Below are positions 31,784 to 61,557 of a DNA stretch of 64,000 nt, one piece after another. The position numbers and the translations under genes were made by a program. This DNA comes from Haplodiscus bocki. Its lineage: Eukaryota. The stretch's first letter is position 1. Each line of letters starts with the position of its first letter. The stretch is taken from NCBI GenBank assembly GCA_965655095.1, contig OZ296656.1, positions 71,176,001 to 71,240,000 of the forward strand, in the 5' to 3' direction. Under the pieces are notes generated by a model. That model had not been told where the DNA came from and ran no database searches. It saw nothing but the letters and a program-made list of their open reading frames with translations.

Positions 31784-31971
31784 GAATGTTAACCTAAGCT
31801 TTCACCATAACCAAGTTTGAATTGTAACCAAGCCTTGTCTGAATTGTAAATACCTTACTCTTAATATAACTAATTTCTGTAAATAATTTCTGTAACTAAT
31901 CATTTGTGTAACTAATCCTTTGTGTAACCAATCATTTGTATAAAGAAACTTCAATGAATTAATTCTTTAAA

Positions 31972-31988
31972 AGCCTAATTGTTGTGAT
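31972..31988 (+). repeat. Junction 17-mer copy 2
   Basis: Exact; preceded by AATTCTTTAAA. Confidence 0.95.
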
Positions 31989-32142
31989 ATTGCTGTGCGA
32001 TTTTGCTTTCGTCAATTCGAACTAGCTTTTACATCACGGTTTCTGCAGTCATTGCAGCTAAACTCTGTGATTCATCGCCTTTACGTTGAATAACGTTGTT
32101 ATTAAACTTACTGTGTATTGATATTACATAATTCATTACATA

Positions 32143-35100
32143 ATGCCAAATTTTCTCAACCACCCACATGTAACGCAAACTTTCCCGAAATATCCATTCT
32201 CTTCTCAAAACAATGCAATTCAACAAACAACATCAACTCTAAATCATCCCCCAAATAGGGGCTATATTCCTCCAGCGGAAAGACTGAGGCTGGCCGCGTT
32301 AGCGGAAGAAATCAACAATCCAAACCCGCAAAACTTCAACCAAAAAGACTTTCCCAACCTCCAAGCCGAGGGACACGGTCCAAGCCAAATCTGCAGCATT
32401 ACTACACCCTCTACAAAAGACGTCCAAGGCAAATCTGATTCTCCGCATGCATCCGAAATGACAAAGAATTCAACAACACCCAACACAGTAACAGAACAGA
32501 ACAAAGAAGTTGCAGCAAATAACTCTTCAAACCCAAATAACTCTTCAGGCCCCAATACAAGCTCCGCGTCAGCTCCGACTCCTGAGTGTATTCAAAACCC
32601 AAACGGAATCGCCCAAACAGATTCCAATACGAATTGCTACAGATCAGCTCTTGGCGTCCAATCTCTACCAGACATACAAAGGATTCTGAAAATGAAGATT
32701 ATCCCCCCTTTTAGAAAAGAACACTTTGAAAATGCTGCTGTATTAGAACGTGAAATTTCAAGAGCGTACTCAGAAATCCTTTTACCTTTTCATCCAAGAC
32801 ACCGTCCTTACATAACTATCTCAAGAACTTTTGAAAAACGAAACAACAAATCGCTCCATACATTACTAGTGACTGCCCCCCAAGAAGCAGAACAAGATGT
32901 CGAAAACATCAAAATCAATGGGCTCCAAATTATGGGGCGAACGGTTTTCCCAACCGGGGAGGACTTCTACCAAATAAGAACATCACAATATCCAAGGAAA
33001 GTTTGGGTACGAATTACTAATTTACCGTATCTCTGCAATGATGTCTCACTAATGGAAATGCTGAACCTACCAAAGCAAATCCAACCTCTCGGGCCCCTCC
33101 AAAGGGAAACCATAAACACTGAATATGGCCAAATCCACAGTGGCAAGGCAAGAATCCAGGTCTCTGTGCCAGATGCCGAATCCATAAACAAACTGAGAGA
33201 GTGGTCCTTTCTAAAAAACGGCCTTGAAATTACACAATGGTGTGACATCCCCATCTACATGTCTGCACCAAGTCTTCATCAATGCACAGCCTGCAAAACC
33301 GAGGGCAGACTCCACGTCGGTCACGATATTCTGTGGTGCAGAATAAACAGAAACAAAATTGATCAAAATGTTACAACACCACCCCAAACCACTGAAGACG
33401 AATCAACTCCAATTGCCATTGAAGAGGACAATATTGCCAGAACCCCCGAAGACCACAATAACAACGGAACTGATCAACAGCAAGGCCAACATGGAACGTC
33501 AGCAGACATACAAAGTGAGGCGGAAGTAGAGAGTGAAAAAGAAGAAAGCGAACCAGAAGAGGAGCAATGGGTAAACAACACTTCTAAAAACAAAAATAAC
33601 TCTGGTATCAAAAGACCCAACCCCCCTTCTGACACATCAGGCACCCCAAGAAAGACCTCCAACAACAAGTTCCAAATCCTTGGCAACTCTTCAGGCGATG
33701 AGACTCCAAATAACAAAGAAAACAAGAAACAAAAAGATACTCAACACACCCGTGTCCAAAAGAAAAAAAACAAAAAACTGTCGATAATGGTGAGAATGGA
33801 TAAAACCTTTGACTTATTCTCCTTTAATGTTAGAGGTTTAGCCTCTCAAAAGGCCAAACTTATCGAGATCTGCAACCTTACTAAAAAACTAAGTAAAAAC
33901 AAAAAATACTTTGTGTTGCTTCAAGAAACAAAACTCGAAAAAATGAAGGAGGAACTTAATAAAATCTTAGAATATCACAATCTGGAGTATGTTATGACTC
34001 CGGCCTATCAAAACTCAGGAGGTTTACTGATCCTTTTCCCCAAAAACTCAAACATCGAAGTACTTGGCAAGACACGATGTTCATTAGTAGTTTTTGATAA
34101 AGAATCCAAAATCGTCATAATGAATATTTACATAAATCCTAAAGATTATTCCCTAGAAATGCTTAAAGCATCAATAGAAGAGCTAAAATTGACACATGAT
34201 CATCAAATAATAATGGCAGGTGACCTCAACTTTATCAACCCTTCGTATACGTCCTCAAACAACATCAAACCAAAATCGATCATAAAACCAAATGACATAC
34301 GAATATTGAGATATAAAAAATTTGTACCTGTCAAATCCAGCCTTCTACTAATAGACCTAGCTCTTCTATTGCAAAACATAGGCCCCACCCATGTTGACAA
34401 AAGACTTGGGAATCATAGTCGTATCGACTACATTTTTAGCAATATAACGAAATTTTCCGTAGATAGCCATAAACTAGATCTTATACCATTTACCTATTCT
34501 GATCACAAAGGCCTACATTTATATGAACTGAATCACACTGAAATCATCCAGCCTCTATGGAAACTAGACAACAATGTGCTCGAACGATCAGAATCAGTAA
34601 ATGATATTCTCCAACATGCAAAAACTGCTAGTAGCAAATTTGGAAACATTGTGTCTTGCCATGACATTTTCAAAGCCAAAGTGAGAGACTGTCTTAAAAC
34701 TCTCAGTGTGAATATCAAACGCTCTAAAGAAGCCGAAATACTTGATATTCAGAATAGGATCACAAAAATTGAAAAAATTTTGCAAAATGCTCAAAATGTA
34801 ACCCTCCCAGAATCTCGTGAAAAACAGTGGAAAAACCTATCTGAACTGGAGCAAAAACTTCAGAAAATAAAAAATATAGAAAACAACAAAGTTGCTAAGC
34901 AAATCAAAGGATTCTTCCGTGAAGCCAACGAAGGCAACCCAAAAATGATAAAACTTTTGGCAAAAAATATAGCCTTAGATAAAGAAATCAAAAAAATCGA
35001 AAAACAAGATGGCTCCTTAACTGAGGACCCCAATGAGATTATCGATGAATTTTTCAACTTTTATAAAACAGTGAGTCAACCAAAATTTGGACAGTCGGAA

Positions 35101-37092
35101 AACATCTCAAAAACTCAACAAAAATACATTGACCGATTTTTTCGCCAAAAACGTAAAGCCATAAAAGATATACAAAAAAACTTCCCAGAAACAACTGAGT
35201 CAGATACAATAACAGAATTTGAAGTAGAACGTGCTATCGGTAAATTAAATCAAGAAAGCGCGCCAGGCTCAGATGGTCTAACCTCGAGTTTATATGTAGC
35301 CAACAAAACTTTTTTTGTACCCTACCTTACCGATCTGTTTAATGAAATTCATACTAACAAACAAGTTCCTCCTTCATTCAAACATGCTATCATAAAAATT
35401 ATTCCAAAAAAAAATGGCTCAATCAAAGTCTCAGAATTCCGTCCTATCAGTCTCATTAACACGGACCAAAAAATTCTTTCAACTGTGCTTGCAGAAAGAA
35501 TTAAACCTAGGCTGGACATATTGCTAGGATGTCATCAAAACGCCCATCTACCAAACAGGAATATACACATAGCAATACAAAAAATCCAAACCTACGCTCA
35601 CGAAACTTCAGTAAGAGAATCTATCGTAGCCATAGACTTCAGCAAAGCCTTTGATTGCATTGAACGAAGCTATCTAAGAAAGATCATCAACCAATCACCA
35701 TTCGATGGAATCACTAAAAAACTAATTGGCCTCACATACGACAATACATCCGCATTTATTGGCATGAGAATTGGTATATCTGAAAGGTTCAAAGTCGAGA
35801 GAGGCGTCCGTCAAGGATGTCCACTATCAGCGCTGATCTTCAACCTGTGCCTAGAGCCTCTTTTACAACGAATACAAAAAACAAAACACATCAAATCCAA
35901 ACAACAAACAAAATGCATTGCTTATGCGGATGATGTTACTATAAGCCTATATAACAAATCTATTAGAAACCTCCTTTTAATTTTGCACGAATTCTATAAT
36001 GTTGCAGGCTTGGAAGTCAATCTCGCTAAAACTGAGGTGCTCTCAAAAGCACAGAGAATTTTCGGAGCAAATCAGCTAAAACGTGTAGAATCAACAAAAA
36101 TCCTAGGCATCTACATTTCGCTGAAGAAAAGCATTAACTATCAAACAAATCAAATAATCGATAACACAATAACTCACTCAGACAAATACATCCAAAAGAT
36201 GAGTTCTTTAAGAGCTAGAGCAAAAAACATAGAAACCTTCATTCTAACCAAAATAATGTTCCATTGCAGACATCTTATTCTAACGAAAAATTTTCTGAAA
36301 AAAATCAACTCTAAAATAGCTGATATGCTCTGGCTACACAAAAAACACAACGTACATAATGAAACTCTAAATCTACAACTTTCAAAAGGAGGTATCAATC
36401 TAAAAAACACAACAATTTATTACCTAGCAAACAAAATTATGAACCTAAAATTTCTAGCCTTCAACCCAAAAGAGGAACATTTCATCCAAAAGTTCAAATC
36501 TTCTGAAACCTTCAAGAAAATGGCCCTGCATCTAACCAAGCACAACATTTTCCTCAATAATTTTGCCCTAAGCCAACTAAATATCCAATATATGATGCAA
36601 TCACTAGAGCTTACTAAACAAACAACATGGAAAGATGTCTATTTCTTCCTTACGAATGCCACTATACAAGTCCCTCCTTTCAATAGAGTAGGAATTAGTG
36701 CAATAAAACAAAATGTCATGCCGGACATCCTATTTAATACACTTAAGAATCTTTGGAAAAATAAAAATCTCCAAACTTTTGACAAAAACTATCTCTACTG
36801 TTTCATCATGAATTCATATTTGGAAAAACAAGAAAAATGGCTCAAGAACCTAAGTCCCCATCCATTATGCTTCGGATGCGAAACCAAATTTGAAACATGG
36901 GATCACCTAATGTTCGAATGCCCACTAACACAACCAATCAGCAAGGCTCTTAACATAAAGAACTGGAAGGATGTCTGGCTTGACAGATCTTGCCGCTCAC
37001 AAAAATTTCTAGTCTCCCTTCTTTTAGCATCGTGGACCGAAAGTTGTGGTCCATACCTACAATTTTTCTTGGACAGAGTACCGCAGGTCTGA
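32143..37092 (+). CDS. E2 ORF1-ORF2 fusion polyprotein (ORF1 domain, zinc knuckle, APE, RT, CCHC); intact
   Basis: ILKMKIIPPFRKEHF...CTAC-x9-H-x4-C...FSFNVRGL, LQET, GDLN, IDYIF, SDH, DFSKAFD, GVRQGCPLS, YADD, CFGC..ETWDHLMFEC in one frame. Confidence 0.93.
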   Translation: MPNFLNHPHVTQTFPKYPFSSQNNAIQQTTSTLNHPPNRGYIPPAERLRLAALAEEINNPNPQNFNQKDFPNLQAEGHGPSQICSITTPSTKDVQGKSDSPHASEMTKNSTTPNTVTEQNKEVAANNSSNPNNSSGPNTSSASAPTPECIQNPNGIAQTDSNTNCYRSALGVQSLPDIQRILKMKIIPPFRKEHFENAAVLEREISRAYSEILLPFHPRHRPYITISRTFEKRNNKSLHTLLVTAPQEAEQDVENIKINGLQIMGRTVFPTGEDFYQIRTSQYPRKVWVRITNLPYLCNDVSLMEMLNLPKQIQPLGPLQRETINTEYGQIHSGKARIQVSVPDAESINKLREWSFLKNGLEITQWCDIPIYMSAPSLHQCTACKTEGRLHVGHDILWCRINRNKIDQNVTTPPQTTEDESTPIAIEEDNIARTPEDHNNNGTDQQQGQHGTSADIQSEAEVESEKEESEPEEEQWVNNTSKNKNNSGIKRPNPPSDTSGTPRKTSNNKFQILGNSSGDETPNNKENKKQKDTQHTRVQKKKNKKLSIMVRMDKTFDLFSFNVRGLASQKAKLIEICNLTKKLSKNKKYFVLLQETKLEKMKEELNKILEYHNLEYVMTPAYQNSGGLLILFPKNSNIEVLGKTRCSLVVFDKESKIVIMNIYINPKDYSLEMLKASIEELKLTHDHQIIMAGDLNFINPSYTSSNNIKPKSIIKPNDIRILRYKKFVPVKSSLLLIDLALLLQNIGPTHVDKRLGNHSRIDYIFSNITKFSVDSHKLDLIPFTYSDHKGLHLYELNHTEIIQPLWKLDNNVLERSESVNDILQHAKTASSKFGNIVSCHDIFKAKVRDCLKTLSVNIKRSKEAEILDIQNRITKIEKILQNAQNVTLPESREKQWKNLSELEQKLQKIKNIENNKVAKQIKGFFREANEGNPKMIKLLAKNIALDKEIKKIEKQDGSLTEDPNEIIDEFFNFYKTVSQPKFGQSENISKTQQKYIDRFFRQKRKAIKDIQKNFPETTESDTITEFEVERAIGKLNQESAPGSDGLTSSLYVANKTFFVPYLTDLFNEIHTNKQVPPSFKHAIIKIIPKKNGSIKVSEFRPISLINTDQKILSTVLAERIKPRLDILLGCHQNAHLPNRNIHIAIQKIQTYAHETSVRESIVAIDFSKAFDCIERSYLRKIINQSPFDGITKKLIGLTYDNTSAFIGMRIGISERFKVERGVRQGCPLSALIFNLCLEPLLQRIQKTKHIKSKQQTKCIAYADDVTISLYNKSIRNLLLILHEFYNVAGLEVNLAKTEVLSKAQRIFGANQLKRVESTKILGIYISLKKSINYQTNQIIDNTITHSDKYIQKMSSLRARAKNIETFILTKIMFHCRHLILTKNFLKKINSKIADMLWLHKKHNVHNETLNLQLSKGGINLKNTTIYYLANKIMNLKFLAFNPKEEHFIQKFKSSETFKKMALHLTKHNIFLNNFALSQLNIQYMMQSLELTKQTTWKDVYFFLTNATIQVPPFNRVGISAIKQNVMPDILFNTLKNLWKNKNLQTFDKNYLYCFIMNSYLEKQEKWLKNLSPHPLCFGCETKFETWDHLMFECPLTQPISKALNIKNWKDVWLDRSCRSQKFLVSLLLASWTESCGPYLQFFLDRVPQV

Positions 37093-37342
37093 GAAAAAAA
37101 AAGAACAAAAAGGAAATTAAATAAAAAAAAAACAAAACAAAACAAAAAACAAAAAAAAAAACTAACAACAAAATACACTACACTACAACACTCATATACA
37201 TGTTGCGGATCTCAAGTGCTTTTTATATTACTTCTCAGTTTTCATTGTTAAATTTGCTTTTACATTATTTTATGTTTATTTTATTTTATTCTTTATTTAA
37301 CAATTTGTTTACATATATACAAGATATAATACATTTTTGAAA

Positions 37343-37359
37343 AGCCTAATTGTTGTGAT
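37343..37359 (+). repeat. Junction 17-mer copy 3
   Basis: Exact; preceded by CATTTTTGAAA. Confidence 0.95.
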
Positions 37360-37522
37360 AACGCCTTTTGATTGTGATAGCTATTACTCGCTTGAATCCT
37401 TGGCTCGCTATTAATTGGCCGTCTCCTGTTGACTCAGGATTCTTGTCAATTTTCACCACATACTATTGTGGTGAAATTATCATTTGGAAATTGGAATTTA
37501 GTTCGCTTTTAGCTTCACAGGA

Positions 37523-38350
37523 ATGGCTAAAGCCGAAGTAATTGTGAAAGATGAAGATACAGAACAAAGACTTCGAAATTGGGCCATGGAATCATACCAA
37601 CTATTCAGAAACTGCCGGAATGCTATATTTCAAGCTTGTGCCTTCAGTATGCTTGAATGCTCTAACTGTAAAGGTGCAAATCTTCAATTTTGTCACCACC
37701 CAAGCCGCTGCAACATTATTTTTGACAATCAACGAAAAGAAAACGAATGTGAAACAAATATTGCAGAAAAAAACAACGCTGATTACGTTATGGAAATCTC
37801 TGGAAATGTAAAACATGGGATTATGGAAAATGATCAGGAAACTATTCTAAGCAATGAAAACTCACCAACAACCAATGCAGAAGAGATGGACAGCAATTCA
37901 GACGAAGAAAGCGACCTAGAAAGTGAAAACGAACCCGCTGAAAAAGCTCAAAAGGCAGAAATTGAAACTACAAATGACGAAATTCAAAAAACATCCGCAA
38001 ATGCTAACCCTAAACAAAATGTGGTACCTTCTACTGCTGTAGTACTTGTTTATGATGCTAAAGCCTTGTGTTCAAAGATACTTCCAACTCAATCTGTCAT
38101 CAAGGACAATCCTCAAATTGAAAAGAAGTTTACAGAAACAAATCCGAAAAACTTTTCAATCGGTGATTTAACATACAATTTGGATTTTAAGCGTATCAAA
38201 ACTAATGATATGAGGAATCTTTTCAAAACACACGCCTGCAGGAAGAAAAACTCGCAAGAAATATACAATAGACACGAAGAAAAGGAAAAAATAATCGGAA
38301 GACTTGATATTTTCTACAATCAAAAAAAACGACAGACTTTATTGTACTAA
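37523..38350 (+). CDS. E3 truncated ORF1-like protein (275 aa)
   Basis: (FTG)MAKAEVIVKDEDTEQRLRNW aligns by eye with ORF1 (FTG)RA..I.....E..LR.W. It has CSNC-x8-H-x4-C and then an acidic region. Confidence 0.65.
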   Translation: MAKAEVIVKDEDTEQRLRNWAMESYQLFRNCRNAIFQACAFSMLECSNCKGANLQFCHHPSRCNIIFDNQRKENECETNIAEKNNADYVMEISGNVKHGIMENDQETILSNENSPTTNAEEMDSNSDEESDLESENEPAEKAQKAEIETTNDEIQKTSANANPKQNVVPSTAVVLVYDAKALCSKILPTQSVIKDNPQIEKKFTETNPKNFSIGDLTYNLDFKRIKTNDMRNLFKTHACRKKNSQEIYNRHEEKEKIIGRLDIFYNQKKRQTLLY

Positions 38351-38691
38351 TCTATATAATGATGTAAAACTTAGATTACAATTCTTTGAACGCTCAAAAC
38401 CCCCTCCTATGACAACTCGCAATTAGTCTTTTTGACCTCACAATTAAAATATCAACCCTATATAACATCTACCAATACCCAAAAAAAAAATTTGCTTTCT
38501 CGCAAACTATCTCGTAGTCCACACTACTATTTTCATTATATTTCATGACCAGTTCCATCTCCATCTTTCTATATAAAAAAAATCATCAGGCTTTTTGGAG
38601 CTAAACTACACTACAAAAATACATAAATTTTTTTCATAATTACTTACTCATTGTACTTGTACATTTATAGTCTCCAAATTTATTCTTTAAA

Positions 38692-38708
38692 AGCCTAATT
38701 GTTGTGAT
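38692..38708 (+). repeat. Junction 17-mer copy 4
   Basis: Exact; preceded by TATTCTTTAAA, followed by AAAC. Confidence 0.95.
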
Positions 38709-38911
38709 AAACATGTTTTTGAACAATGAAAGCTAACCCTCTAGATCTGTAAATCCAGTCGTGAGAAGTTGTTCGATCCATCGAACTCTACGGAGCCTGC
38801 TGGCTAAGTTTGTTACTTGTAACGAACGATAAACCGAGGTAGCTTCTCCCAATCTAAGTGCTGCTAGTTTGTAGAGAGCTAGCCATCAGGCACTGGGTTG
38901 TAACAGAACAT

Positions 38912-39573
38912 CTCTCATTGGTCCTCACCAAACTGCGTACCTTCCCCAACGGTCATTTCATTCCTCGCTTACCCACGTCAATTTAAACTTAGAATACCTC
39001 ACTGAGGAGGATTGTCTAGTTGCCTGTGACTTCAGTAAAGCTTTTGATAAACTCGACCGAACCTATCTTTTTGCTCTCCTACAGCAAATTGGTCTCCATC
39101 CAACCACTCTCGGTCTCATCCAACTCATGTATCACCATACTGATGCTTTTCTTGATATCAACGGTTCGCTATCTCCAGTTGTTAACATAACTAGTGGTGT
39201 CCGTCAAGGATGTCCACTTTCCTCACTTCTCTTTATTCTTGGCCTCGAACCGTTCTTATTTCATCTCCAACGTAACACCGCCATCCAATCATCGAGTCCT
39301 TTCAAAATCATAGCTTATGCCGATGATATTACATGTTGTCTTAAAATCAACAGCCTCCAATATCTCTTCGATACTATCAATATTTTCTCGTCGGTCACTA
39401 ACCTGTATCTGAATCAACAGAAAACTGAGATCTTATGTTCCGGCTCACTCCCAAGTGGCTTCCTATCGGTTCCCGCTGTCAAAATCTTAGGTGTTCAGTT
39501 TTCAATAAATAACTCAGCGATTCAACTGAATTCAGCAATCCTGCAGGCAAACAAATCACGGCTTTTCTGTAAT
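38912..39573 (+). pseudogene. RT-core fragment copied from an E1-type element
   Basis: 662 bp near-identical to 30196-30857; contains DFSKAFD, GVRQGCPLS and YADD codons. Confidence 0.9.
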
Positions 39574-39700
39574 GTGCTTTTTATATTACTTCTCAGTTTT
39601 CATTGTTAAATTTGCTTTTACATTATTTTATGTTTATTTTATTTTATTCTTTATTTAACAATTTGTTTACATATATACAAGATATAATACATTTTTGAAA

Positions 39701-39717
39701 AGCCTAATTGTTGTGAT
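39701..39717 (+). repeat. Junction 17-mer copy 5 (duplicate of copy 3)
   Basis: Exact. Confidence 0.95.
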
Positions 39718-39880
39718 AACGCCTTTTGATTGTGATAGCTATTACTCGCTTGAATCCTTGGCTCGCTATTAATTGGCCGTCTCCTGTTGACTCAGGATTC
39801 TTGTCAATTTTCACCACATACTATTGTGGTGAAATTATCATTTGGAAATTGGAATTTAGTTCACTTTTAGCTTCACAGGA

Positions 39881-40708
39881 ATGGCTAAAGCCGAAGTAAT
39901 TGTGAAAGATGAAGATACAGAACAAAGACTTCGAAATTGGGCCATGGAATCATACCAACTATTCAGAAACTGCCGGAATGCTATATTTCAAGCTTGTGCC
40001 TTCAGTATGCTTGAATTCTCTAACTGTAAAGCTGCAAATCTTCAATTTTGTCACCACCCAAGCCGCTGCAACATTATTTTTGACAATCAACGAAAAGAAA
40101 ACGAATGTGAAACAAATATTGCAGAAAAAAACAACGCTGATTACGTTATGGAAATCTCTGGAAATGTAAAACATGGGATTATGGAAAATGATCAGGAAAC
40201 TATTCTAAGCAATGAAAACTCACCAACAACCAATGCAGAAGAGATGGACAGCAATTCAGACGAAGAAAGCGACCTAGAAAGTGAAAACGAACCCGCTGAA
40301 AAAGCTCAAAAGGCAGAAATTGAAACTACAAATGACGAAATTCAAAAAACATCCGCAAATGCTAACCCTAAACAAAATGTGGTACCTTCTACTGCTGTAG
40401 TACTTGTTTATGATGCTAAAGCCTTGTGTTCAAAGATACTTCCAACTCAATCTGTCATCAAGGACAATCCTCAAATTGAAAAGAAGTTTACAGAAACAAA
40501 TCCGAAAAACTTTTCAATCGGTGATTTAACATACAATTTGGATTTTAAGCGTATCAAAACTAATGATATGAGGAATCTTTTCAAAACACACGCCTGCAGG
40601 AAGAAAAACTCGCAAGAAATATACAATAGACACGAAGAAGTGGAAAAAATAATCGGAAGACTTGATATTTTCTACAATCAAAAAAAACGACAGACTTTAT
40701 TGTACTAA
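39881..40708 (+). CDS. E5 truncated ORF1-like protein (275 aa; first knuckle Cys changed to Phe)
   Basis: Differs from the E3 ORF at three residues (ECSNC>EFSNC, G>A, K>V). Confidence 0.6.
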   Translation: MAKAEVIVKDEDTEQRLRNWAMESYQLFRNCRNAIFQACAFSMLEFSNCKAANLQFCHHPSRCNIIFDNQRKENECETNIAEKNNADYVMEISGNVKHGIMENDQETILSNENSPTTNAEEMDSNSDEESDLESENEPAEKAQKAEIETTNDEIQKTSANANPKQNVVPSTAVVLVYDAKALCSKILPTQSVIKDNPQIEKKFTETNPKNFSIGDLTYNLDFKRIKTNDMRNLFKTHACRKKNSQEIYNRHEEVEKIIGRLDIFYNQKKRQTLLY

Positions 40709-47895: not shown

Positions 47896-47922
47896 TTTTA
47901 GTCCTTGGTTTTTATCTATTTT

Positions 47923-51636: not shown

Positions 51637-52989
51637 ATGGAACGACCAACGGCCACGATTGACTCTGCCTCTTCTTCTGCTCTGATGATGACCAACAACA
51701 CTATTCTGACAACGGCTTACCACGGTTATTTGAATCCTGAACAACGTGTAGAATTCTATCAAAACCAAGAATCATCGACTACCCAAGCAGCACCACCGCC
51801 TGAAACTGTAACAAAGTACATCACCCAAGCACTTCAACAACCAAGCTACTCGGGCATCGCCTCTAACAATCTTCCGCAACCAAGAACCATGAATATACTT
51901 AAACTAAAAATCATCCCTCCCTTCAACAAAGACCACTTCCCAACAAAGGAAACCTTCGAAACAGCTTCTAACCATTGTATCGCTTCTATCTTACGAAAAT
52001 TCTCACCGCAACTAAGAACTAAGCTCACGTTATCCAAAACCTTCACTATGGTTGGGACCCGAAGACTACATACTTTTCACCTCGTGGCTCCAACTGAAGC
52101 CTCCGACGTTTTCACCAGACTACAGACTAATGGGATTGAAATGTTGGGAAGAACGGTCATTCCTCAAAGTGACTCTTTCCCGCGTGTCATCCCTGGACTC
52201 TACCCGAAGCATGTTCCTGTACGGATACTTCAACTTCCATCAATTTGTCAGGACTCAGAACTATCAGACATTCTCGACTTACCCGACTCCACTCACATTA
52301 CATCGATTCGACGTGATACTGACGAAATTGACGGTATGCACTTCTTCACTGGACGGGTTTCGGCCATGATTCGTGTGGTTTCACACGAACACGAAGCGGT
52401 GCTACGCCAATGGTCCATCCGCAACCACGAAAATGGAACTTTGACTTGGAATGATATACCCATCTACGCCTTCATTCCTGCTCTGCACCAGTGTACCCAT
52501 TGCAGGGAGCACAGACGGCCCTTCCATGGGCACGATGTGGCCTGGTGTAGGTATGCCAGGGTGGAGGAGCAACAAAGACAGATGACTAACTGCAACCAAG
52601 ACACCACTGTGCAACCACGCAACCAAGATGACACTGTTCCACCATGCAACCAAGATGACACCACTCCAACTAATGACGCAACCACGGTAACCAATGTGAA
52701 TCAAGACGAACCCTCTGACAGCAACCAAGAGACTGATAGCAACCAAGTGGAGATTCAAACTGACAACGAAGATGATGATGATGATGACGATTCCCAACGC
52801 CCATGGCAAACTGCTCCGCCCCACCCAAGAAAAACCATCCCTGCAACCACGTCTCAATCACAACCTCCCACTTTCAACACAACCAAGAGAAAAGCTGACC
52901 ATAACAAAGTAAGATTTTTTGCGTCGAAGAATCTGGCGCTCCAGGCACCCCTCAAAAAGAAGAAGAAGAAACCACCCAAGTCATCTTAA
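51637..52989 (+). CDS. E8 ORF1
   Basis: ATGGAACGAC start; knuckle; KKKKKK tail. Confidence 0.87.
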   Translation: MERPTATIDSASSSALMMTNNTILTTAYHGYLNPEQRVEFYQNQESSTTQAAPPPETVTKYITQALQQPSYSGIASNNLPQPRTMNILKLKIIPPFNKDHFPTKETFETASNHCIASILRKFSPQLRTKLTLSKTFTMVGTRRLHTFHLVAPTEASDVFTRLQTNGIEMLGRTVIPQSDSFPRVIPGLYPKHVPVRILQLPSICQDSELSDILDLPDSTHITSIRRDTDEIDGMHFFTGRVSAMIRVVSHEHEAVLRQWSIRNHENGTLTWNDIPIYAFIPALHQCTHCREHRRPFHGHDVAWCRYARVEEQQRQMTNCNQDTTVQPRNQDDTVPPCNQDDTTPTNDATTVTNVNQDEPSDSNQETDSNQVEIQTDNEDDDDDDDSQRPWQTAPPHPRKTIPATTSQSQPPTFNTTKRKADHNKVRFFASKNLALQAPLKKKKKKPPKSS

Positions 52990-53014
52990 TTCTTAACTTT
53001 CTCCTATTTTTGTA

Positions 53015-56000
53015 ATGAATGTCTTCTCTTTGAATTGTCGAGGTCTGAAAGACCATAGACGCCTTCAAATAATTATTAATAATTGCATACGACAACTTTC
53101 AGACCTCGACAATCTTTGCATGTGCTTGCAAGAAACTAAGATTTCTAACCTAAGTAATAACCATCTAAAAATCCTGGCGCACTATCATCTTTCCTATATT
53201 CTATATCCTGCTGATGGTCAATCAGGAGGACTCCTCACGATTTTTCCAAAACATTGTACAGTGCTAGGGACACATAAGTCACCTAACACAATAAGTATCC
53301 ACTTTTCTCAACATACTTTCACATTAACAAACATCTACATCAAACCGACTGACTACCACCTTCAACAATTTCTATCAGACATTCTTGTCATCGAGCAATT
53401 TCATTGTGAAACTCACATTCTATGTGGTGATTTCAATGCGTTACCATCAGCTGACTGCACTTCCAGCTGCCACGTTGCAAATAATGATTTTCGACTTCTT
53501 AGATATCATCGTATTCTTGACATCCTTCATAATCTTCATGTGGTACGTGTTGAACCTCACTCACCATTGACGAAATTCACACATTTTGACAAGAGAACTA
53601 GCTCTGCTAGTCAGATTGATCACTTCTTCACTAGCCAACCCCACTATGTATATAACACAACAAAAATCTCCTTTTCCGATCATGCTCTTCTTTCTCTAGA
53701 AGTCTCGAATGTCACTATGACAAGTTCCAGCTACTGGAAACTTAATGACAATGCATTGATCCATCATGACTATATCACAAGCATCATCTTCGACACTCTG
53801 CACTCCTCTCACAATCCCAATAATTTCGATGTACAACATTATGATCGGGTTAAAACCAAAATGAGAGACCATCTTCGTGCTTTATGCATCTTCTTGCATA
53901 AGCAAGCGCTTCATGAAGAAAGATACTTGACAGCCGAAATTTCAAAACTTGAACATTGCATATCCAATAATGCTGCTGACCCTGTTCTGATTAAACAGTT
54001 GTCCACTTTAAACTCGCAACTCATGCACTATCAAAGTATGCAAGCCACAAAAGACTTTAAACAGATCAAACACTATTTTACCGATTGTCATCATGGCGAC
54101 TCACATTCGGTCAAAAAACTTATTTGCTCGCGTCGGCAAAAATCTAACATTGAATCTCTTGACTTAACAGATGGCTCTACCACATCCAACATTGACAACA
54201 TCTTCTATGAATTCCACCACCACTTTTCTCAACGATTCACACAACCGATCCATACAACTTCCCAACTCTCTGAATTTGCGAACCTCTTACAACCTTTTCT
54301 TAGCACACATTCGAGCGCAATACAAGCTAACATAGCTCAAAATACCCATAACTCGCAGTTAACAGAACAGGAAGTGGAAGAGGCAATTAAAAAACTCAGA
54401 TAGTGCTCCAGGATTAGATGGTTTAACATCTAACTTTTACAAAGCCCATGCAAACTTTTTTATTCCATACTTAACTAACATGTTTAACTTAATGATCTCA
54501 CATAACTGGGTTCCTGGATCCTTCACACGAACGGTGATTAAGTTAATACCGAAAAAACCGGTTTCGCGTACGGTCGAAGACTATCGTCCGATTACTCTTA
54601 TTAACACCGATCAAAAAATTCTCTCGCATCTTCTTGCTAATCGCCTAAAAAAGTCCTTGACCACTCTCATTGGTCCTCACCAAACTGCATACCTTCCCCA
54701 ACGGTCCATTCATTCCTCGCTTACCCACGTCAATTTAAACTTAGAATACCTCACTGAGGAGGATTGTTTAGTTACTTGTGACTTCAGTAAAGCTTTTGAT
54801 GAACTCGACCGAACCTATCTTTTTGCTCTCCTACAACAAATTGGCCTCCATCCGTCCACTCTCGGCCTCATCAAACTCATGCATCACCATACTGACGCAT
54901 TTCTTGATATCAACGGATCGCTATCTCCAGTTGTTAACATAACTAGTGGTGTCCGTCAAGGATGTCCACTTTCCTCGCTCCTCTTTATTCTTGGCCTCGA
55001 ACCGTTCCTATTTCATCTCCAACGTAACACCGCCATCCAATCATCTAGTCCATTCAAAATCATAGCGTACGCCGATGACATTACATGTTGTCTTAAAATC
55101 AACAGCCTCCAATATCTCTTCGATACTATCAATATTTTCTCGTCGGTCACTAACCTGTATCTGAATCAACAGAAAACTGAGATCTTATGTTCTGGCTCAC
55201 TCCCAAGTGGCTTCCTATCAGTTCCCACTGTCCAAATCTTAGGTGTTCAGTTTTCCATAAATAACTCAGCGATTCAACTGAATTCCGCAATCTTGCAGGC
55301 AAACAAATCACGGCTTTTCTGTAATCCATATAATACGTTTCTCGCTCGCGCCAAAAACGTTGAGACTTTTGTTATGCAAAAACTCATTCATCAAGTTCGC
55401 CATAAATATGTATTGAAGACGCAGCTAGAAAGAATTGACAATATCTTTGTTGATTCAATCTGGTTAGGACGTAAACATAATATGAAGAAAACTATTCTCC
55501 AAAAACCATGGGCCTCCATGGGAATTGGTCTTAAAAATTTTACGCAGGTTATCACTGCGGCCAAAATTATTGACTACAAGAATTTTTTCTATTCGAATCC
55601 TACTAGCAATCAGTACCGCCTCTTTCGTAATTCGAAACTTTTCTCTAACATGAGACGCTTACTGCGGACCTTCAACTGTACGCTCAGTTTAGATAATACC
55701 TCTCAAATACTTCTCCGCAGATCATCTCAAGTCTTAGTTCTTACTCCACTGATGCGTACTCGCACGGTCTATCGGTTTCTTAGCTCCACAAATACGCATG
55801 ATTCTCTATTGCGTCTAACCCAAATAGCGTCTCGCCTCAATTACCCACCCGATCAGATCTTTATGTTTTTGCGGCGCTTATGGAAGCATAAATCATATGC
55901 AGCGTTTGAGAAAAACTATCTGTATCAATTTTTCATGAATTGTTACATGGATAAAACTGTTAAATTTGAACATGGATGGACTGAGACTCCTTTCTGTTGT

Positions 56001-56252
56001 TTCTGTGGCTCTGCCGCAGAAACCTTCCACCATCTTTTATCGGAATGTCCGAATATTCCGCATCTGAACTTCTTTCCCACAGTAGGTCATCCGCAACTCA
56101 TCTTCCACCTTCCCAATGACTTTTATCCTTTTAAACGACTCATTGCTCTCCTTATTTGTTCGTGGAGTAACGACTCACGCAAATTTGCAAAATACTTCAT
56201 TAACTGTGTGAAATTCAGGAACCCAACTATAAGTTTATATACTAATCTTTAA
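53015..56252 (+). pseudogene. E8 ORF2 with a 5-nt deletion frameshift near 54395
   Basis: AAAAAACTCAGAT here versus AAAAAACTTAACTCAGAT in E1. Confidence 0.9.
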
Positions 56253-56452
56253 GAATGTTAACCTAAGCTTTTATCATAACCAAGTTTGAATTGTAACTAA
56301 GCCTTGTCTGAATTGTAAATACCTTACTCTTGATATAACTTTCTGGATTTCTAATTTCTGTAACTAATTTCTGTAACTAATCATTTGTGTAACTAATCAT
56401 TTGTGTAACCAATCATTTGTATAAAGATACTTCAATGAATTAATTCTTTAAA

Positions 56453-56469
56453 AGCCTAATTGTTGTGAT
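56453..56469 (+). repeat. Junction 17-mer copy 9
   Basis: Exact; preceded by AATTCTTTAAA. Confidence 0.95.
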
Positions 56470-56792
56470 CGCCTTTGATAAAGAGAGCTTTCCTTGCTTG
56501 AATCGAAGTGATTGTGACCATATTGTGACCATAGATTGGCCAGAATTTCATCTGTGACTTCTATTGGTTACTACTATTCATCACTTTTTGTGGTGAAAAG
56601 TCTTATCATTGAATCGACCTTTACTTCATTCAGCACAGACTTGCAACACAGCAACACAGAATTGCGGCGTGGACTACGGATTCTTCTCTTCTACTTCTGT
56701 GACGTGACTTCTCATTGAAAACTTCTGACACAGCTTTCCCGCTGATTAATACTGATTTTTCATTCAGTATTTCAGCTCAAAATTTTTGAAAA

Positions 56793-58091
56793 ATGGAACG
56801 ACAAATGGCCATGGCAGACGATGTTTCTCTCTACCCCCCTCTCAAAAATAGCTCTTCTGACACAGTTCAACACTACATGACACCTGAACAACGCGTAAAC
56901 TTCTATAATAACCAAGAAATGTCACTTTGCAACCAAGAAAGAACAAACAATGTCAACCAAGAAAACAAGCAACCAAGTTATTCTGGAATTACTTCTCAAA
57001 ACACTCCGCAACCAAGAACAATGAGCATATTGAAACTAAAGATTATTCCCCCCTTTAACAAAGACCACTTCGTAACTAAGACTACCTTTGAAACCGCTTC
57101 CAATCAGTGTATTTCAGCAATCTTACGACAATTTTCCCCGCAACTAAGATCAAAACTCACAATATCCAAGACCTTCACCATAGTAGGAACCCGAAGACTT
57201 CACACTTTCCACATTGTTGCACCAATCGAAGCCTCAGAAGTAATCTCTCGTCTCCAGTCCAGTGGAATTGAAATGCTTGGACGAACAGTCATCCCACGAA
57301 GTGACTCTTTTGAGCGCTATATCCCGGGTATCTACCCAAAACACATCCCAATACGAATCTTACAACTTCCCTCACTCTGCAACGAACAAGACCTTCCTGA
57401 CATTCTTAATTTGCCCGAATCAACACAAATTACATCTCTGCGACACAACACGGAACTGATTGACGGAATGAACTTCTTCAATGGGCGAGCATCGGCCATG
57501 ATTCGAGTGGTGTCAAAGGAACACGAGCAGATGCTACGAGAATGGTCCATTCACAACCACGAAAATGGGACACTTGAATGGAATGGCATTCCAATTTACG
57601 CATTCATACCAGCTCTTCATCAATGTCAGCATTGTAAGAACAACCGTCGGCCGTTCCAAGGACATGATATTGCTTGGTGTAGGTATGCGAAAGATGAAAA
57701 ACAACAAAGTCCAAATAATCTTCCCAACAATCCGAACCAAGCTCTTACACAAAACTGCAACCAAGACGAATCACAACACCACAGCAACCAAGTCACAACA
57801 CCTGAAAACCCTACTAATTCCAACGATGAAACCAACATGACCCAAGATGACGACTCTGAAAGCAACAAAGACCCTGATGGCAATCAAGTAGACATTGAAA
57901 CAAACAGTGACACCGATGATGATATACAACAACCATGGCAAACAACACAACCAAGAAAAACAACAACCGCAACCAAGACACTATCCCAACCAGCCGATTT
58001 CAAGCATACTAAGAGGAAAGCTCGACTTTTTATGGCGAAGAATCTTTCGATTCAAACGCCTGTAACTAAGAAAAAAAAACCTGCGAAATGA
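56793..58091 (+). CDS. E9 ORF1
   Basis: 432 aa; conserved ORF1 motifs; CQHC-x9-H-x4-C. Confidence 0.87.
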   Translation: MERQMAMADDVSLYPPLKNSSSDTVQHYMTPEQRVNFYNNQEMSLCNQERTNNVNQENKQPSYSGITSQNTPQPRTMSILKLKIIPPFNKDHFVTKTTFETASNQCISAILRQFSPQLRSKLTISKTFTIVGTRRLHTFHIVAPIEASEVISRLQSSGIEMLGRTVIPRSDSFERYIPGIYPKHIPIRILQLPSLCNEQDLPDILNLPESTQITSLRHNTELIDGMNFFNGRASAMIRVVSKEHEQMLREWSIHNHENGTLEWNGIPIYAFIPALHQCQHCKNNRRPFQGHDIAWCRYAKDEKQQSPNNLPNNPNQALTQNCNQDESQHHSNQVTTPENPTNSNDETNMTQDDDSESNKDPDGNQVDIETNSDTDDDIQQPWQTTQPRKTTTATKTLSQPADFKHTKRKARLFMAKNLSIQTPVTKKKKPAK

Positions 58092-58112
58092 TCTTTTCTT
58101 ATATTTTCCAAA

Positions 58113-61100
58113 ATGAATGTTTTTTCGTTTAATTGTCGAGGTCTGAAAGACCATCGACGTCTTCAAACAATTGTAAATCAATGTCTCCAAAAACAATCAG
58201 ACCTCGACAATCTTAGCATTTGCTTGCACGAAACTAAGATTACTAATATCACTAACAACCATCTAAAAATCCTGGAGCACTATCACCTTTCATATCATAT
58301 ATATCCATCGGAAGGTCAATCTGGAGGACTGCTAACGATTTTTCCAGAAAAATACAAAATGCTCAACATGCATAAATCATCAAACACAATAAGTATCCAC
58401 TTTTCTCAACACAACTTCACACTAACAAACACATACATTAAACCGACTGACTACCAACTCCAACAATTTTTATCGGATACTCTTGCTATTGAAAACTTCG
58501 AATGCAACACTCACGTCATATGTGGTGACATCAACGCGCTCCCATCATCTAGCTGCACATCTAATCGTAATGTGGCAAATAATGACTTCCGTCTTCTCAG
58601 ATATCATCGTATTATTGACATTCTCCATAATCTTCATGTAGTACATGTTGAACCTGCATCTCCATCAACAAGATTCACGCATTTTGATAAAAGATCTAGC
58701 TCTTCCAGTCAAATTGACCATTTTTTCACTAGTCAATCTCACTATGTCTATGAGACCACAAAAATTTCTTTCTCCGATCATGCCCTTCTCTCTCTTAGAC
58801 CTTCCAACGTAGTTATGACAAGTACTAGCTATTGGAAACTTAACGACAATGCACTGCAACACTATGCTTATATAGCAACCATTATCACAGAATCCCTACA
58901 AACGTCTCATGATCTAAATAATTCCCACTTACACCATTATGATCTTGTTAAAAATACCATGAGAGACCGTCTTCGTTCTCTATGCATTTTCCTACATCGA
59001 CAAGCAGTTCATGAAGAGAGATTTTTAATAGCAGAAATGTCAAAGGTAGAAAATGAAATCTCTAATAATGGTGCAGACACTGTTCTGATTAAACAGTTAT
59101 CAACTCAACTCACAATTCCTTAATTACCAAAATATGAAAGCCAAAAAAGATTTCAAACAAATCAAACAATATTTTACAGATTGTCATCATGGAGATTCAC
59201 ACTCTGTCAGAAAACTCCTCTGCTCACGTCGACAAAAATCAAACATTGAATCAATTGACCTACCAGACGGTTCCTCCACATTCAACATTGACAGTATCTT
59301 CCATGAATTCCACAACCATTTCTCTCAACGATTCACACAATCAACTCACACAACATCAGATACGACCTCTCATCTCTCCAACATTAACAACATTCTACAA
59401 TCATTTCTCACAACACATTGGCATGCGATACAAGATAATATTGCTCAAAATACCCATCATTCACAAATAACAGAACAAGAAGTAGAAGAAGCAATTAAAA
59501 AACTTAACTCAGATAGTGCTCTAGGATTAGATGGTTTAACATCTAACTTCTATAAAGCAAATGCAATTTTTTTTGTTCCGTACTTAACTACTATATTTAA
59601 CTTGATAATTATTTATAATTGGGTTCGTGAATCCTTCACAAGAACAGTGATTAAACTAATTCCGAAAAAACCGTTTCCACGTATGGTCGAAGACTATCGT
59701 CCGATTAGCCTTATTAACACTGATCAAAAGATTCTCTCTCATCTCCTTGCTAATCGCCTCAAAAGCTCCCTGACCAGTCTTATTGGCTCTCACCAAACTG
59801 CTTACCTCCCTCAACGCTCAATTCACTCCTCGCTTACCCAAGTTAATCTAAACTTAGAACAACTCACTGATGAGGATTGTCTTGTTGCTTGTGATTTTAG
59901 CAAAGCTTTTGATAAACTCGACCGAACCTATCTTTTTGCTCTTCTAGAGCAAATTGGCCTCCATCCGTCCACGCTTGGTATCATCAAAACAATGTATCAC
60001 CATACTGATGCATTTCTTGATATAAATGGATCGCTATCTCCAATTATTAATATGACTAACGGTGTCCGTCAGGGCTGTCCACTTTCTCTTCTTTTTATTC
60101 TTGGCATTGAACCTTTCCTGTTTCATCTCCAGAAAAATACTTCCATTCTATCAACTAGTCCTTTCAAAATCATAGCCTATGCAGATGACATTACATGTTG
60201 TCTTAAAATCAACAGCCTCCAACATCTCTTCTATACTATCAACACTTTCTCTTCAGTTACCAATCTCTATCTTAATCTACAGAAGACTGAGATCTTATGC
60301 TCTGGATCACTTCCAAATGGTTTCGTTTCGGTTCCTTCTATCAAAATTTTAGGTGTGGAGTTTTCCTTGAACAATTTTAGCAATTCAAATGAATTCGGCA
60401 ATCTTGCAAGCACACAAATCACGAATGTTTTGCAACCCATATAATACCTTTCTTGCTAGAGCCAAAAACATTGAAACATTTGTTATGCATAAACTCATTC
60501 ATCAAATTCGACATAAATATGTATTAAAGACGCAGCTCGAAAGAATTGATAATATCTTAGTTGATTCAATCTGGTTAGGACGTAAACACAATCTGAAAAA
60601 AACTATCCTCCAAAAACCATGGGTCTCCATGGGAATTGGTCTTAAAAATTTTACACAGGTTATCACTGCGGCCAAAACCATTGACTATGAAAATTTTCTT
60701 TACTCAAATCCTACTAGTAATCAATATAACTTTTTTCGTCATTGTAAACTTTTCTCTAATTTGAGACGCCTATTGCGAACTTTCAACTGTACCCTCAATA
60801 CAGATAATTCTTCTCAAGTCGCTCTCCGCAAATCATCTCATACCCTCATTCTCACTCCATGAACGCGTACTCGTGAAGTTTATCGTTTCATTAGCTCCAC
60901 TAATACTCATGAATCTGTCTCGCGTCTAACACAACTTGCGTCTCGCCTCAACTATCCACCAGACTTAATCTTTTTATTTCTGCGGCGCCTATGGAAACAT
61001 AAAGCATATGCAGCATTTGAGAAAAATTATCTCTACCAATTTTTCATGAATTGTTACATGGACAAAAGCATTAAATTCCAACATGGATGGAGTGACACTC

Positions 61101-61363
61101 CCTTCTGCTGTTTCTGCGGCTCTGCTGAAGAAACTTTTCACCACTTACTCTCCGAATGTACCAACATTCCTCATTTGAATTTCTTTCCAACAATAGGCCA
61201 TCCGCAGTTAAACTTCCAAAATTCAACTGACATATATCCTTTCAAACGACTCATTGCGCTACTCATTTGCTCGTGGAGTAACGACTCACATAAATTTCGA
61301 AAATACTTTGTAAATTGTGTGAGGCTCAGGAACCCAACTATTAGTCTACATATTAATACATAA
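58113..61363 (+). pseudogene. E9 ORF2 with multiple frameshifts and a nonsense codon
   Basis: ORF pieces 58113-59123, 59134-60444, 60389-60862 and 61046-61363 are collinear with E7 ORF2. Confidence 0.9.
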
Positions 61364-61540
61364 AAACTTAAGACTATGCCCTCAACATAACCAAGCCCTT
61401 GAACATTACAATGGATTTTTTTGTTAACTTAGATTTTTTCAATAAATTATTCGAATGTTTGATTGCTTGATTTATGATGCCTTACTTTGATTTGTTTATT
61501 TGATTTGATTTAGAGCACTTAAATGAATTAATTCTTTATA

Positions 61541-61557
61541 AGCCTAATTGTTGTGAT
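61541..61557 (+). repeat. Junction 17-mer copy 10
   Basis: Exact; preceded by AATTCTTTATA. Confidence 0.95.

What the first reader, a model, noticed from the sequence alone, without database searches (positions are those of the whole stretch)
31955..61557. Divergent lineages share a poly(A)-less 3' terminus that rebuilds an endonuclease site
Seen: the 3' ends read AATTCTTTAAA (E1, E7, E8), TATTCTTTAAA (E3/E5), AATTCTTTAGA (E6), AATTCTTTATA (E9) and CATTTTTGAAA (E2), directly followed by the 17-mer. The rest of the 3'UTRs largely differ and there is no terminal poly(A). Known: L1-type endonucleases nick 5'-TTTT/AA on the bottom strand, and TTTAAAAG at several junctions is that consensus. Inference: each tail recreates the upstream half of the cleavage site, keeping the downstream TSD targetable. 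Read-through RNA into the 17-mer could also anneal to the nicked primer.
Basis: partly seen in the sequence, partly recalled or inferred. Interest (0 to 1): 0.7.

Follow-up and report, generated by a model that had tools for sequence, protein, structure and literature searches.

The report
Shared poly(A)-less tail of spliced-leader LINEs
A whole clade of L1-like jumping genes that insert into an acoel worm's spliced-leader RNA genes ends in the same 15-letter A/T-rich block instead of a poly(A) tail; this block is most likely their own copying signal and does not copy the native upstream flank of their cutting site.

Summary
The window holds a head-to-tail array of L1-type (AP-endonuclease plus RT) LINEs separated by an exact 17-mer. 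That 17-mer is one A plus the first 16 bases of the published Symsagittifera roscoffensis spliced leader (SL). It is a true 17-bp target-site duplication.

The shared terminus is 15 nt long, not 11: AAT-W-N-ATTCTTY-AAA. It ends 11 deep lineages, autonomous and non-autonomous, from three assemblies. It never carries more than three A's and loses all conservation at -16. The lineages form one clade, so the tail is inherited and kept by selection.

It has no conserved RNA structure. It does not resemble the native upstream flank (YGCTTTT|AGCC), and single insertions into native SL genes carry it too.

My best reading (about 0.45) is a single-stranded template signal that replaces poly(A). Read-through into the downstream 17-mer would anneal to the nicked strand and fix the start of copying. 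A polyadenylation-signal reading is a real rival.

The scan had already noted this terminus and the SL target on adjacent DNA of the same contig.

The parts
26892..26907 (+). Native upstream flank of the SL RNA gene at the head of the array (...AGTTCGCTTTT, then AGCC).
   Evidence: A paralogous or allelic version seen in read contigs varies at 26863-26891, but no difference was listed in the last 16 nt. Four other native flanks end in TTGCTTTT.
26908..26924 (+). First copy of the 17-mer (A plus SL nt 1-16). It is the 5' target-site duplication of E1.
   Evidence: Matches the published SL.
26925..31971 (+). E1, lineage A. ORF1 is present; the ORF2 reading frame is split in two. The 15-nt tail is at 31957-31971.
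31972..31988 (+). 17-mer between E1 and E2.
31989..37342 (+). E2, lineage B, with one 1649-aa ORF covering the ORF1-like part, APE and RT. Tail AATACATTTTTGAAA at 37328-37342.
37343..37359 (+). 17-mer between E2 and E3.
37360..38691 (+). E3, lineage D, non-autonomous (1.3 kb). Its first 141 nt match a lineage-A 5' end. It holds a 275-aa ORF with no relatives found. Tail AATTTATTCTTTAAA at 38677-38691.
38692..38708 (+). 17-mer between E3 and E4. It is followed by AAAC, so 21 nt match the SL.
38709..39700 (+). E4, a chimeric unit: lineage-C 5' end (201 nt), then a lineage-A internal piece (662 nt), then the lineage-B 3' end (127 nt) with its tail at 39686-39700.
39701..39717 (+). 17-mer between E4 and E5.
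39718..41050 (+). E5, a duplicate of E3 (99.3% identical). Tail at 41036-41050.
41051..41067 (+). 17-mer between E5 and E6.
41068..46303 (+). E6, lineage C, with ORFs broken into three pieces. Tail AATAAATTCTTTAGA at 46289-46303.
46304..46320 (+). 17-mer between E6 and E7.
46321..51372 (+). E7, lineage A, with uninterrupted ORF1 (458 aa) and ORF2 (1035 aa). Tail AATTAATTCTTTAAA at 51358-51372.
51373..51389 (+). 17-mer between E7 and E8.
51390..56452 (+). E8, lineage A, with ORF2 split. Tail at 56438-56452.
56453..56469 (+). 17-mer between E8 and E9.
56470..61540 (+). E9, a lineage-A sub-lineage (77% nt identity to E7). Tail AATTAATTCTTTATA at 61526-61540.
61541..61557 (+). 17-mer between E9 and E10.
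61558..64000 (+). E10, a lineage-A sub-lineage that runs off the window. In the parent contig it ends in AATAAATTCTTTAAA before a degenerate 17-mer.

Best explanation
The block AAUWNAUUCUUYAAA is the inherited 3'-terminal cis signal of one clade of L1-type LINEs specific for the spliced-leader RNA gene.

Shown. The endonuclease nicks the bottom strand just 5' of SL position +1 (5'-GGCT|AAAA) and the top strand 17 nt further on (5'-GTGAT|AAAC). This gives a 17-bp duplication.

Inferred. Element transcripts run on into the downstream copy of the 17-mer. That stretch pairs with the freed bottom-strand end (...AATTAGGCT-3'), so cDNA synthesis starts exactly at the last A of the block. This would explain why there is no poly(A) and no extra base at any junction. 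The unstructured last 15 nt would be read base by base by ORF2p, taking the place that poly(A) has in human L1. That would explain why the block is kept in every autonomous lineage and in the non-autonomous riders while the rest of the 3'UTR drifts.

A cDNA that reaches the 5' end of an RNA starting at the 17-mer ends in that same 17-nt primer. It could therefore re-prime on another read-through RNA. This offers a way to build mixed arrays without cutting array junctions.
For: Eleven deep lineages from three assemblies share the block, with a sharp boundary at -16.

All lineages form one clade (SH-aLRT 97), with RT-domain path lengths above one change per site. Tail variants follow that tree: K and L share G at -9 and -3, and F and G share C at -4. 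This points to inheritance with purifying selection.

Non-autonomous D and I share the tail with the autonomous lineages; D also shares a lineage-A 5' end, like LINE/SINE tail sharing.

There is no conserved structure. Mean MFE z-scores are 0.1 without and 1.3 with the 17-mer, and RNAalifold predicts 0 pairs. The tract would therefore be single-stranded.

Human L1 ORF2p reads the single-stranded template tract sequence-specifically through five domains. Templates with 25N or 20N5A tails fail in TPRT. ORF2 here is most like L1 ORF2p (E = 6e-51).

All 24 tail junctions are exact, with at most three A's. In R2Ol, lengthening the downstream target sequence on the RNA from 4 to 100 nt raised precise insertion from 12% to 96%, and removing the vector sequence raised it to 98%.

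Single insertions in otherwise intact SL-5S repeats carry the same tail.
Against: No RNA data were available. All runs found behave as DNA contigs, so neither read-through nor the true RNA 3' end is shown.

No protein-RNA contact has been tested. The parallel with human L1 is an analogy only.

Positions -15 to -10 look like a polyadenylation hexamer, which this reading does not require.

The palindromic TTTAAA next to the target, and T|AAA at both native nicks, leave room for a DNA-level role.
Confidence: 0.45

Rival explanations
1. Endonuclease-site regeneration. At array junctions the endonuclease nicks 3 nt further upstream, at 5'-GGCTTTT|AAAG on the bottom strand. The tail's TTTAAA then supplies the T|AAA step that the native flank supplies as GGCT|AAAA, and this keeps the duplicated 17-mer usable.
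For: Both native nicks are T|AAA. About 18 tail-flanked 17-mers in the contig have a further unit behind them. TTTAAA is its own reverse complement and lies next to the 17-mer. A C-T-T-T run sits 1-3 nt from AGCC in both the native flanks and the tails.
Against: The tail weight matrix finds nothing in five native flanks, so the 15-nt block as a whole is not a site copy. Position -4, whose complement would lie directly 3' of the shifted nick, varies between T, C and G. The invariant AAT at -15 to -13 and A at -10 are left unexplained. In the tandem SL repeats of L010 and L011, none of 4 tail-flanked 17-mers against 3 of 21 native-flanked ones carries an insertion. Arrays could also arise by re-priming or template switching. 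The benefit to the element itself is indirect.
Confidence: 0.15
2. Polyadenylation module. Positions -15 to -10 are an AAUAAA-type hexamer, -9 to -4 a U-rich spacer and AAA the cleavage region. The UUGUUGUG inside the target 17-mer would act as a GU-rich downstream element. Cleavage at or a few bases into the 17-mer would leave a short target-complementary end that fixes the cDNA start.
For: The hexamers are AATAAA (4 lineages), AATTAA (3), AATACA (2), AATATA (1) and AATTTA (1). They vary only at hexamer positions 4 and 5. From my own knowledge, not checked here, those are the positions where polyadenylation-signal variants are tolerated. The spacing from hexamer to junction (15 nt) and to the GU-rich run (about 23 nt) fits the canonical layout, and L1-type elements usually carry a signal at their extreme 3' end; both points also rest on general knowledge.
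Against: No poly(A) is present in any of 24 copies. Spacers between signal and cleavage site are not normally invariant base by base, yet -8, -6, -5 and -1 are invariant. AAUUAA and AAUUUA are weak variants. No RNA ends were available.
Confidence: 0.2
3. Replacement promoter or initiator. The element's 3' end carries SL-promoter-like sequence. This would re-drive the displaced SL remainder, or the next unit in an array, from the A of the 17-mer.
For: The 3'-terminal 100 nt is the best-scoring part of the whole element against a native upstream region in lineages A, C, I and K. Lineage K holds an exact 12-nt copy of native positions -21 to -10. One 3'-truncated unit is fused exactly to the first base of a 17-mer, as if RNAs start there.
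Against: The blocks conserved among native promoters (GCTG.TA.T.G at about -66 to -52, CGCG.TCCAA at -31 to -20, TGCTTTT at -7 to -1) are absent from the last 200 nt of nearly all lineages. The local similarities hit different parts of the promoter in different lineages. Their scores (22-25) are also reached elsewhere inside the elements.
Confidence: 0.05
4. No function. The block is spread among lineages by template switching or gene conversion that starts in the identical 17-mer.
For: Chimeric units exist, for example E4, which carries the last 127 nt of lineage B on other sequence.
Against: The boundary at -16 is the same in all 11 lineages. Internal variants are lineage-specific and follow the RT tree. 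The block is also kept in single insertions from two other assemblies.
Confidence: 0.05

Closest known systems
R1Bm and R2Ol: site-specific LINEs whose read-through RNA anneals to the target
   Same: Precise 3' junction and no poly(A) in the copy. The downstream target sequence on the RNA is proposed to pair with the nicked strand (for R2Ol, citing R1Bm).
   Different: These are the R1 clade and the restriction-like R2, and they target 28S rDNA. R2 binds a structured 3'UTR. Here the protein is L1-type, the target is the SL RNA gene, and the tail is unstructured.
Tx1-clade target-specific LINEs (Tx1L, Keno in U2 genes, Mutsu in 5S genes, Kibi, Koshi)
   Same: APE-type L1-group LINEs with strict targets in multicopy small-RNA genes or repeats.
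   Different: No SL-gene target is reported for them in the papers I could read. Clade membership could not be tested because I had no reference sequences. Their 3' ends could not be compared.
Stringent-type LINE/SINE shared 3' tails (Kajikawa and Okada 2002, as cited)
   Same: Autonomous and non-autonomous elements share only a short 3' tail, taken as the RT recognition site.
   Different: From my own knowledge, not checked here, the classic cases (L2 and CR1 clades) use a stem-loop plus terminal short repeats. No stem is conserved here, and the block sits in an L1-group clade.
Human L1 ORF2p reading of poly(A)
   Same: Closest solved protein. The single-stranded 3' template tract is read sequence-specifically, and random tails fail in TPRT. 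The nick is at T|A.
   Different: Human L1 needs poly(A) and inserts almost anywhere. Here a fixed 15-mer replaces poly(A) and the target is one 17-bp site.
SL-gene-specific elements NeSL-1, SLACS, CZAR and CRE
   Same: Same kind of target, the spliced-leader exon.
   Different: Those encode a restriction-like endonuclease and belong to early-branching clades. The elements here carry an AP-type endonuclease.

Membership tests
L1-group (L1/Tx1) APE-type non-LTR retrotransposon | N-terminal AP-like endonuclease followed by a reverse transcriptase in ORF2 | tested here: met
   Pfam Exo_endo_phos and RVT_1 in lineages A, B and C.
L1-group (L1/Tx1) APE-type non-LTR retrotransposon | Closest solved relative is L1 ORF2p over the EN, RT and following regions | tested here: met
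   E = 6e-51 over residues 38-879, against 3e-19 for R2.
L1-group (L1/Tx1) APE-type non-LTR retrotransposon | C-terminal Cys-rich zf-RVT segment | tested here: inconclusive
   PF13966 hits at E = 5e-4 to 8e-4, below the gathering score. Relatives carry it in precomputed Pfam.
L1-group (L1/Tx1) APE-type non-LTR retrotransposon | Terminal poly(A) tail | tested here: not met
   At most three A's at 24 junctions.
Tx1 clade | RT phylogeny groups it with Tx1 reference elements | not testable with these tools
   No named Tx1 references were available. Outgroup hits are unnamed or generic.
Tx1 clade | Target-specific insertion with a fixed target-site duplication | tested here: met
   Exact 17-bp duplication at SL positions 0 to +16, including around a 5'-truncated copy.
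Read-through annealing mechanism (R1Bm/R2Ol type) | Precise 3' junction without poly(A) or untemplated bases | tested here: met
Read-through annealing mechanism (R1Bm/R2Ol type) | Template RNA extends into the downstream target sequence | not testable with these tools
   No RNA runs were found.
Stringent-type 3' tail recognition | Tail shared by autonomous and non-autonomous partners | tested here: met
   Lineages D and I share the tail with the autonomous lineages. D also shares a 141-nt lineage-A 5' end.
Stringent-type 3' tail recognition | Conserved stem-loop in the tail | tested here: not met
   No consensus pairs. MFE z-scores are about 0 to +1.3.
L1 endonuclease consensus (5'-TTTT|AA on the nicked strand) | T|A step with A's 3' of the nick at the native target | tested here: met
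   Bottom strand GGCT|AAAAGC and top strand GTGAT|AAAC.
L1 endonuclease consensus (5'-TTTT|AA on the nicked strand) | The same step at array junctions at the same register | tested here: not met
   The bottom strand reads GGCT|TTTAAAG there. T|AAA appears only if the nick shifts by 3 nt. The sequences cannot decide.
Canonical polyadenylation signal | AAUAAA-type hexamer 10-30 nt before the RNA end, and poly(A) in retro-copies | tested here: inconclusive
   A hexamer-like AAUWNA is present in all lineages, but no poly(A) in the copies. RNA ends are unknown.

The most novel reading that the evidence does not exclude
The tail and the 17-mer together form a self-renewing insertion module. Each insertion, through its TTTAAA, leaves behind a fresh T|AAA nick site next to a perfect copy of the target. 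Each finished cDNA also ends in the very primer needed to start on the next RNA. One SL gene can therefore seed an ever-growing mixed array that spares the remaining functional SL genes.
Probability: 0.15. Interest if true: 0.7.

Novelty: new variant of a known kind. Interest (0 to 1): 0.45.

Why it matters
L1-type proteins are thought to depend on poly(A). A natural L1-group clade that has replaced poly(A) with a fixed, unstructured 15-mer would show how ORF2p template choice can be re-specified. That bears on the design of targeted, RNA-templated insertion tools.

The clade has many diverged lineages, has non-autonomous riders, and uses a strict 17-bp target. Together with the exact duplication and the T|AAA nicks on both strands, this gives a compact, testable model of site-specific TPRT in an L1 relative.

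The idea of a rebuilt endonuclease site, if true in its shifted form, would explain how safe-haven arrays grow.

Tried and rejected
1. Tail as a mimic of the native upstream flank. I ran local alignments of 11 tails against 4 native flanks with shuffles. I compared them with sliding windows over whole elements and scanned with a weight matrix. There is no general resemblance. The few good scores (A-window, I-L008, K-L011) hit different promoter parts and are matched by scores elsewhere in the elements.

2. A conserved RNA hairpin. RNAalifold and single-sequence folds gave nothing. My first fold_alignment call also had some wrong coordinates, so I redid it.

3. An SL promoter carried in the 3'UTR. 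The conserved promoter blocks are absent.

4. Resemblances of the tail to the 3' part of the SL exon, to ATTGTT inside the 17-mer, and to an snRNA 3' box. I inspected these by hand only. Each is within what A/T-rich sequence gives by chance over the possible offsets, so I do not claim any of them.

5. RNA evidence. Both run searches found only DNA-like contigs. Read laying could not show RNA ends.

6. Rfam on the window found nothing.

7. Kojima and Fujiwara 2004 and Anzai et al. 2005 were not held, so the 3' ends of Tx1-clade elements could not be compared.

8. The 275-aa ORF of lineage D had no Pfam or Atlas relatives.
Full report
**What is in the window.** The 17-mer AGCCTAATTGTTGTGAT occurs ten times exactly, always on the + strand, between 26908 and 61557. 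Chance expectation is 0.32. It separates ten units, E1 to E10.

The long units encode an ORF1, then an ORF2 with an AP-type endonuclease, a reverse transcriptase and a weak C-terminal zf-RVT match. ORF2 of E7 is most like human L1 ORF2p (E = 6e-51), far ahead of R2 proteins.

Three autonomous lineages in the window are deeply diverged. ORF2 identity is 33% for A against B, about 30% for A against C, and 32-46% for B against C. E3 and E5 are a 1.3-kb non-autonomous lineage (D). E4 is a chimera.

**The target.** The published spliced leader of the acoel Symsagittifera roscoffensis is GCCTAATTGTTGTGATAAACTTATTAAATAGA (PMC9911081). The 17-mer is an A plus its first 16 bases.

The window proved to be part of a 212-kb ENA contig, which I walked for a further 55 kb. 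Relatives of ORF2 led to four more loci in three assemblies.

- L008 holds a single element inside an SL gene. The element is followed by the 17-mer, the rest of the SL exon, a GT donor and a 5S rRNA gene.
- L010 and L011 hold tandem SL-5S repeats of 1076 and 904 bp. Most units are uninterrupted, with single insertions.
- L012 is another single insertion.

A 5'-truncated copy in L010 is flanked by exactly 17 duplicated bases. The 17-mer is therefore a true staggered-nick duplication. The bottom strand is cut at 5'-GGCT|AAAAGC, just before SL +1. The top strand is cut at 5'-GTGAT|AAAC. Both are T|AAA steps, as expected of an L1-type endonuclease.

Read contigs laid on the window also show the SL remainder following a lineage-A tail plus 17-mer elsewhere in the genome.

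**The observation.** With the extra loci I have 24 tail junctions and 11 deep lineages:

- A, B, C, D, F, G, H and I in the window's contig;
- J, K and L in two other assemblies.

Right-anchored comparison shows a 15-nt block, AAT-W-N-A-T-T-C-T-T-Y-A-A-A. It is invariant at -15, -14, -13, -10, -8, -6, -5 and -1, and nearly invariant at -9, -7, -4, -3 and -2. Conservation stops abruptly at -16.

A weight matrix of the block scores 14.9 bits or more at 23 + strand sites in about 170 kb, including the sites it was built from. All 23 lie directly before a 17-mer. The run of A's before AGCC is never longer than three.

**Descent.** An RT-domain tree puts all SL-site lineages in one clade (SH-aLRT 97), apart from about 24 more distant L1-group proteins. 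Paths between the two sub-clades exceed one change per site.

Variants inside the block follow this tree. K and L share G at -9 and -3, and F and G share C at -4. The shared terminus is therefore inherited from the clade's ancestor and kept by purifying selection. It is neither convergent nor recently exchanged.

**Does the tail rebuild the upstream half of the site?** Five native upstream flanks from three assemblies end in YGCTTTT before AGCC. At the same register the tail (TCTTTAAA) shares almost nothing with them. The weight matrix finds no match in any native flank; the best score is -0.6 bits.

Local alignments of tails against native flanks are mostly at chance level. The few better ones hit different promoter parts and are equalled elsewhere in the elements. 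Lineages A and C insert behind both kinds of flank. As stated, then, the inference is not supported.

A weaker form survives. At array junctions the bottom strand reads GGCT|TTTAAAG at the native register. It reads GGCTTTT|AAAG if the nick moves 3 nt. With that shift the duplication would be 20 bp, and the product would look identical to what is seen. The few AGA and ATA variants cannot decide between the two.

Against the weaker form: position -4 varies between T, C and G, the invariant AAT at -15 to -13 is unexplained, and none of the four tail-flanked 17-mers in the tandem repeats of L010 and L011 has been hit again.

**Other readings tested.**

- RNA structure. The last 50 nt fold no better than shuffles, and worse once the 17-mer is added. 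RNAalifold predicts no pairs.
- Carried promoter. The blocks conserved among native SL promoters are absent from the elements' 3' ends.
- Polyadenylation signal. Positions -15 to -10 are an AAUAAA-like hexamer that varies only at its fourth and fifth bases. The UUGUUGUG of the target could act as a GU-rich downstream element. This is a real rival, but it fits poorly with base-by-base invariance of the spacer and with the absence of poly(A).

**Best explanation.** The block is the clade's 3' template signal. In human L1 the single-stranded poly(A) tract is read sequence-specifically by five ORF2p domains, and templates with random 3' tracts fail (PMC10830416). A fixed, unstructured 15-mer at the extreme 3' end is what a poly(A) substitute should look like, and here the non-autonomous riders keep it too.

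The exact junctions are best explained by transcripts that run into the downstream 17-mer and pair with the nicked strand. This has been shown experimentally to raise precise insertion of R2Ol (PMC6530143).

A cDNA that copies an RNA beginning at the 17-mer ends in the same primer. Re-priming could therefore build arrays. The 3'-truncated unit fused exactly to a 17-mer and the chimera E4 show that template switching does occur. These mechanistic steps are inferred, because no RNA data were available.

**Novelty and score.** Conserved 3' tails, poly(A)-less site-specific LINEs and read-through annealing are all known. An L1-group clade with a fixed 15-mer in place of poly(A), on an SL-gene target, is a new variant.

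The scan had already noted the terminus (s1-354098) and the SL target (s1-354047) on adjacent DNA of the same contig. I score interest at 0.45.

Noticed in passing
window 38709-39700: E4 is a three-part chimera: 201 nt of the lineage-C 5' end, 662 nt of lineage-A internal sequence (99.8% identical to E1) and the last 127 nt of lineage B. It sits inside a roughly 2358-bp tandem duplication: 37216-38875 is repeated at 39574-41234.
   Followed up: partly
window 21010-26907: This 5.9-kb stretch upstream of the array head recurs at 99.7% identity about 52 kb downstream in the parent contig, where it heads a second array. The two array heads are therefore one segmental duplication and not independent targets. 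The first array ends in a unit cut off after 417 bp. No SL remainder is present anywhere in the 119 kb read.
   Followed up: yes
window 26925-26970, 46321-46365, 51390-51435, 56470-56510, 61558-61600, 37360-37400: The 5' ends of lineage A and D units share motifs (A, then 1-3 bases, then CGC or TGC; GATAGCT; GCTTGAATC). Most units start with A right after the 17-mer. This may be an internal promoter or a 5' junction signal.
   Followed up: no
window 37523-38350 (and 39881-40708): The non-autonomous lineage D carries an uninterrupted 275-aa ORF with no similarity to the other elements' ORFs, to Pfam or to the ESM Atlas.
   Followed up: partly
L011:11365-11376 versus L011:1230-1241: The 3'UTR of lineage K holds an exact 12-nt copy (AAAAATTGACTC) of positions -21 to -10 of the native SL upstream flank in the same repeat. 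This may be a relic of 3' transduction through a neighbouring SL unit (p about 0.001 before multiple testing).
   Followed up: partly
L010 and L011 (whole loci), L008:6478-6596: SL RNA genes are linked to 5S rRNA genes in tandem units of 904 and 1076 bp. Conserved candidate promoter blocks lie at about -66 to -52 and -31 to -20, and TGCTTTT lies just before the start.
   Followed up: partly
about 2.6 kb and 4.1 kb beyond the window's end (in L002/L003): E10 ends in a normal tail before a degenerate 17-mer (AGCCTAACTGTTGAT). The next unit is the first 1.5 kb of a lineage-A element, 3'-truncated and joined exactly to the first base of the following 17-mer. This is as expected from a template jump off the 5' end of an RNA that begins with the 17-mer.
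   Followed up: partly
about 31.2 kb beyond the window's end (in L005/L006): One unit's 5' end carries two partial repeats of the 17-mer (TTGTTGTGAT and TAATTGTTGTGAT) after the full copy. This suggests slippage or repeated microhomology joins at the 5' junction.
   Followed up: no
window versus L001 (for example near 40930): The window differs from the public ENA contig by single-base homopolymer indels, so the two are different versions of the same assembly region.
   Followed up: no
window 4871-7243, 8703-9443, 10232-10975 (- strand): Long ORFs on the opposite strand upstream of the array were not examined.
   Followed up: no
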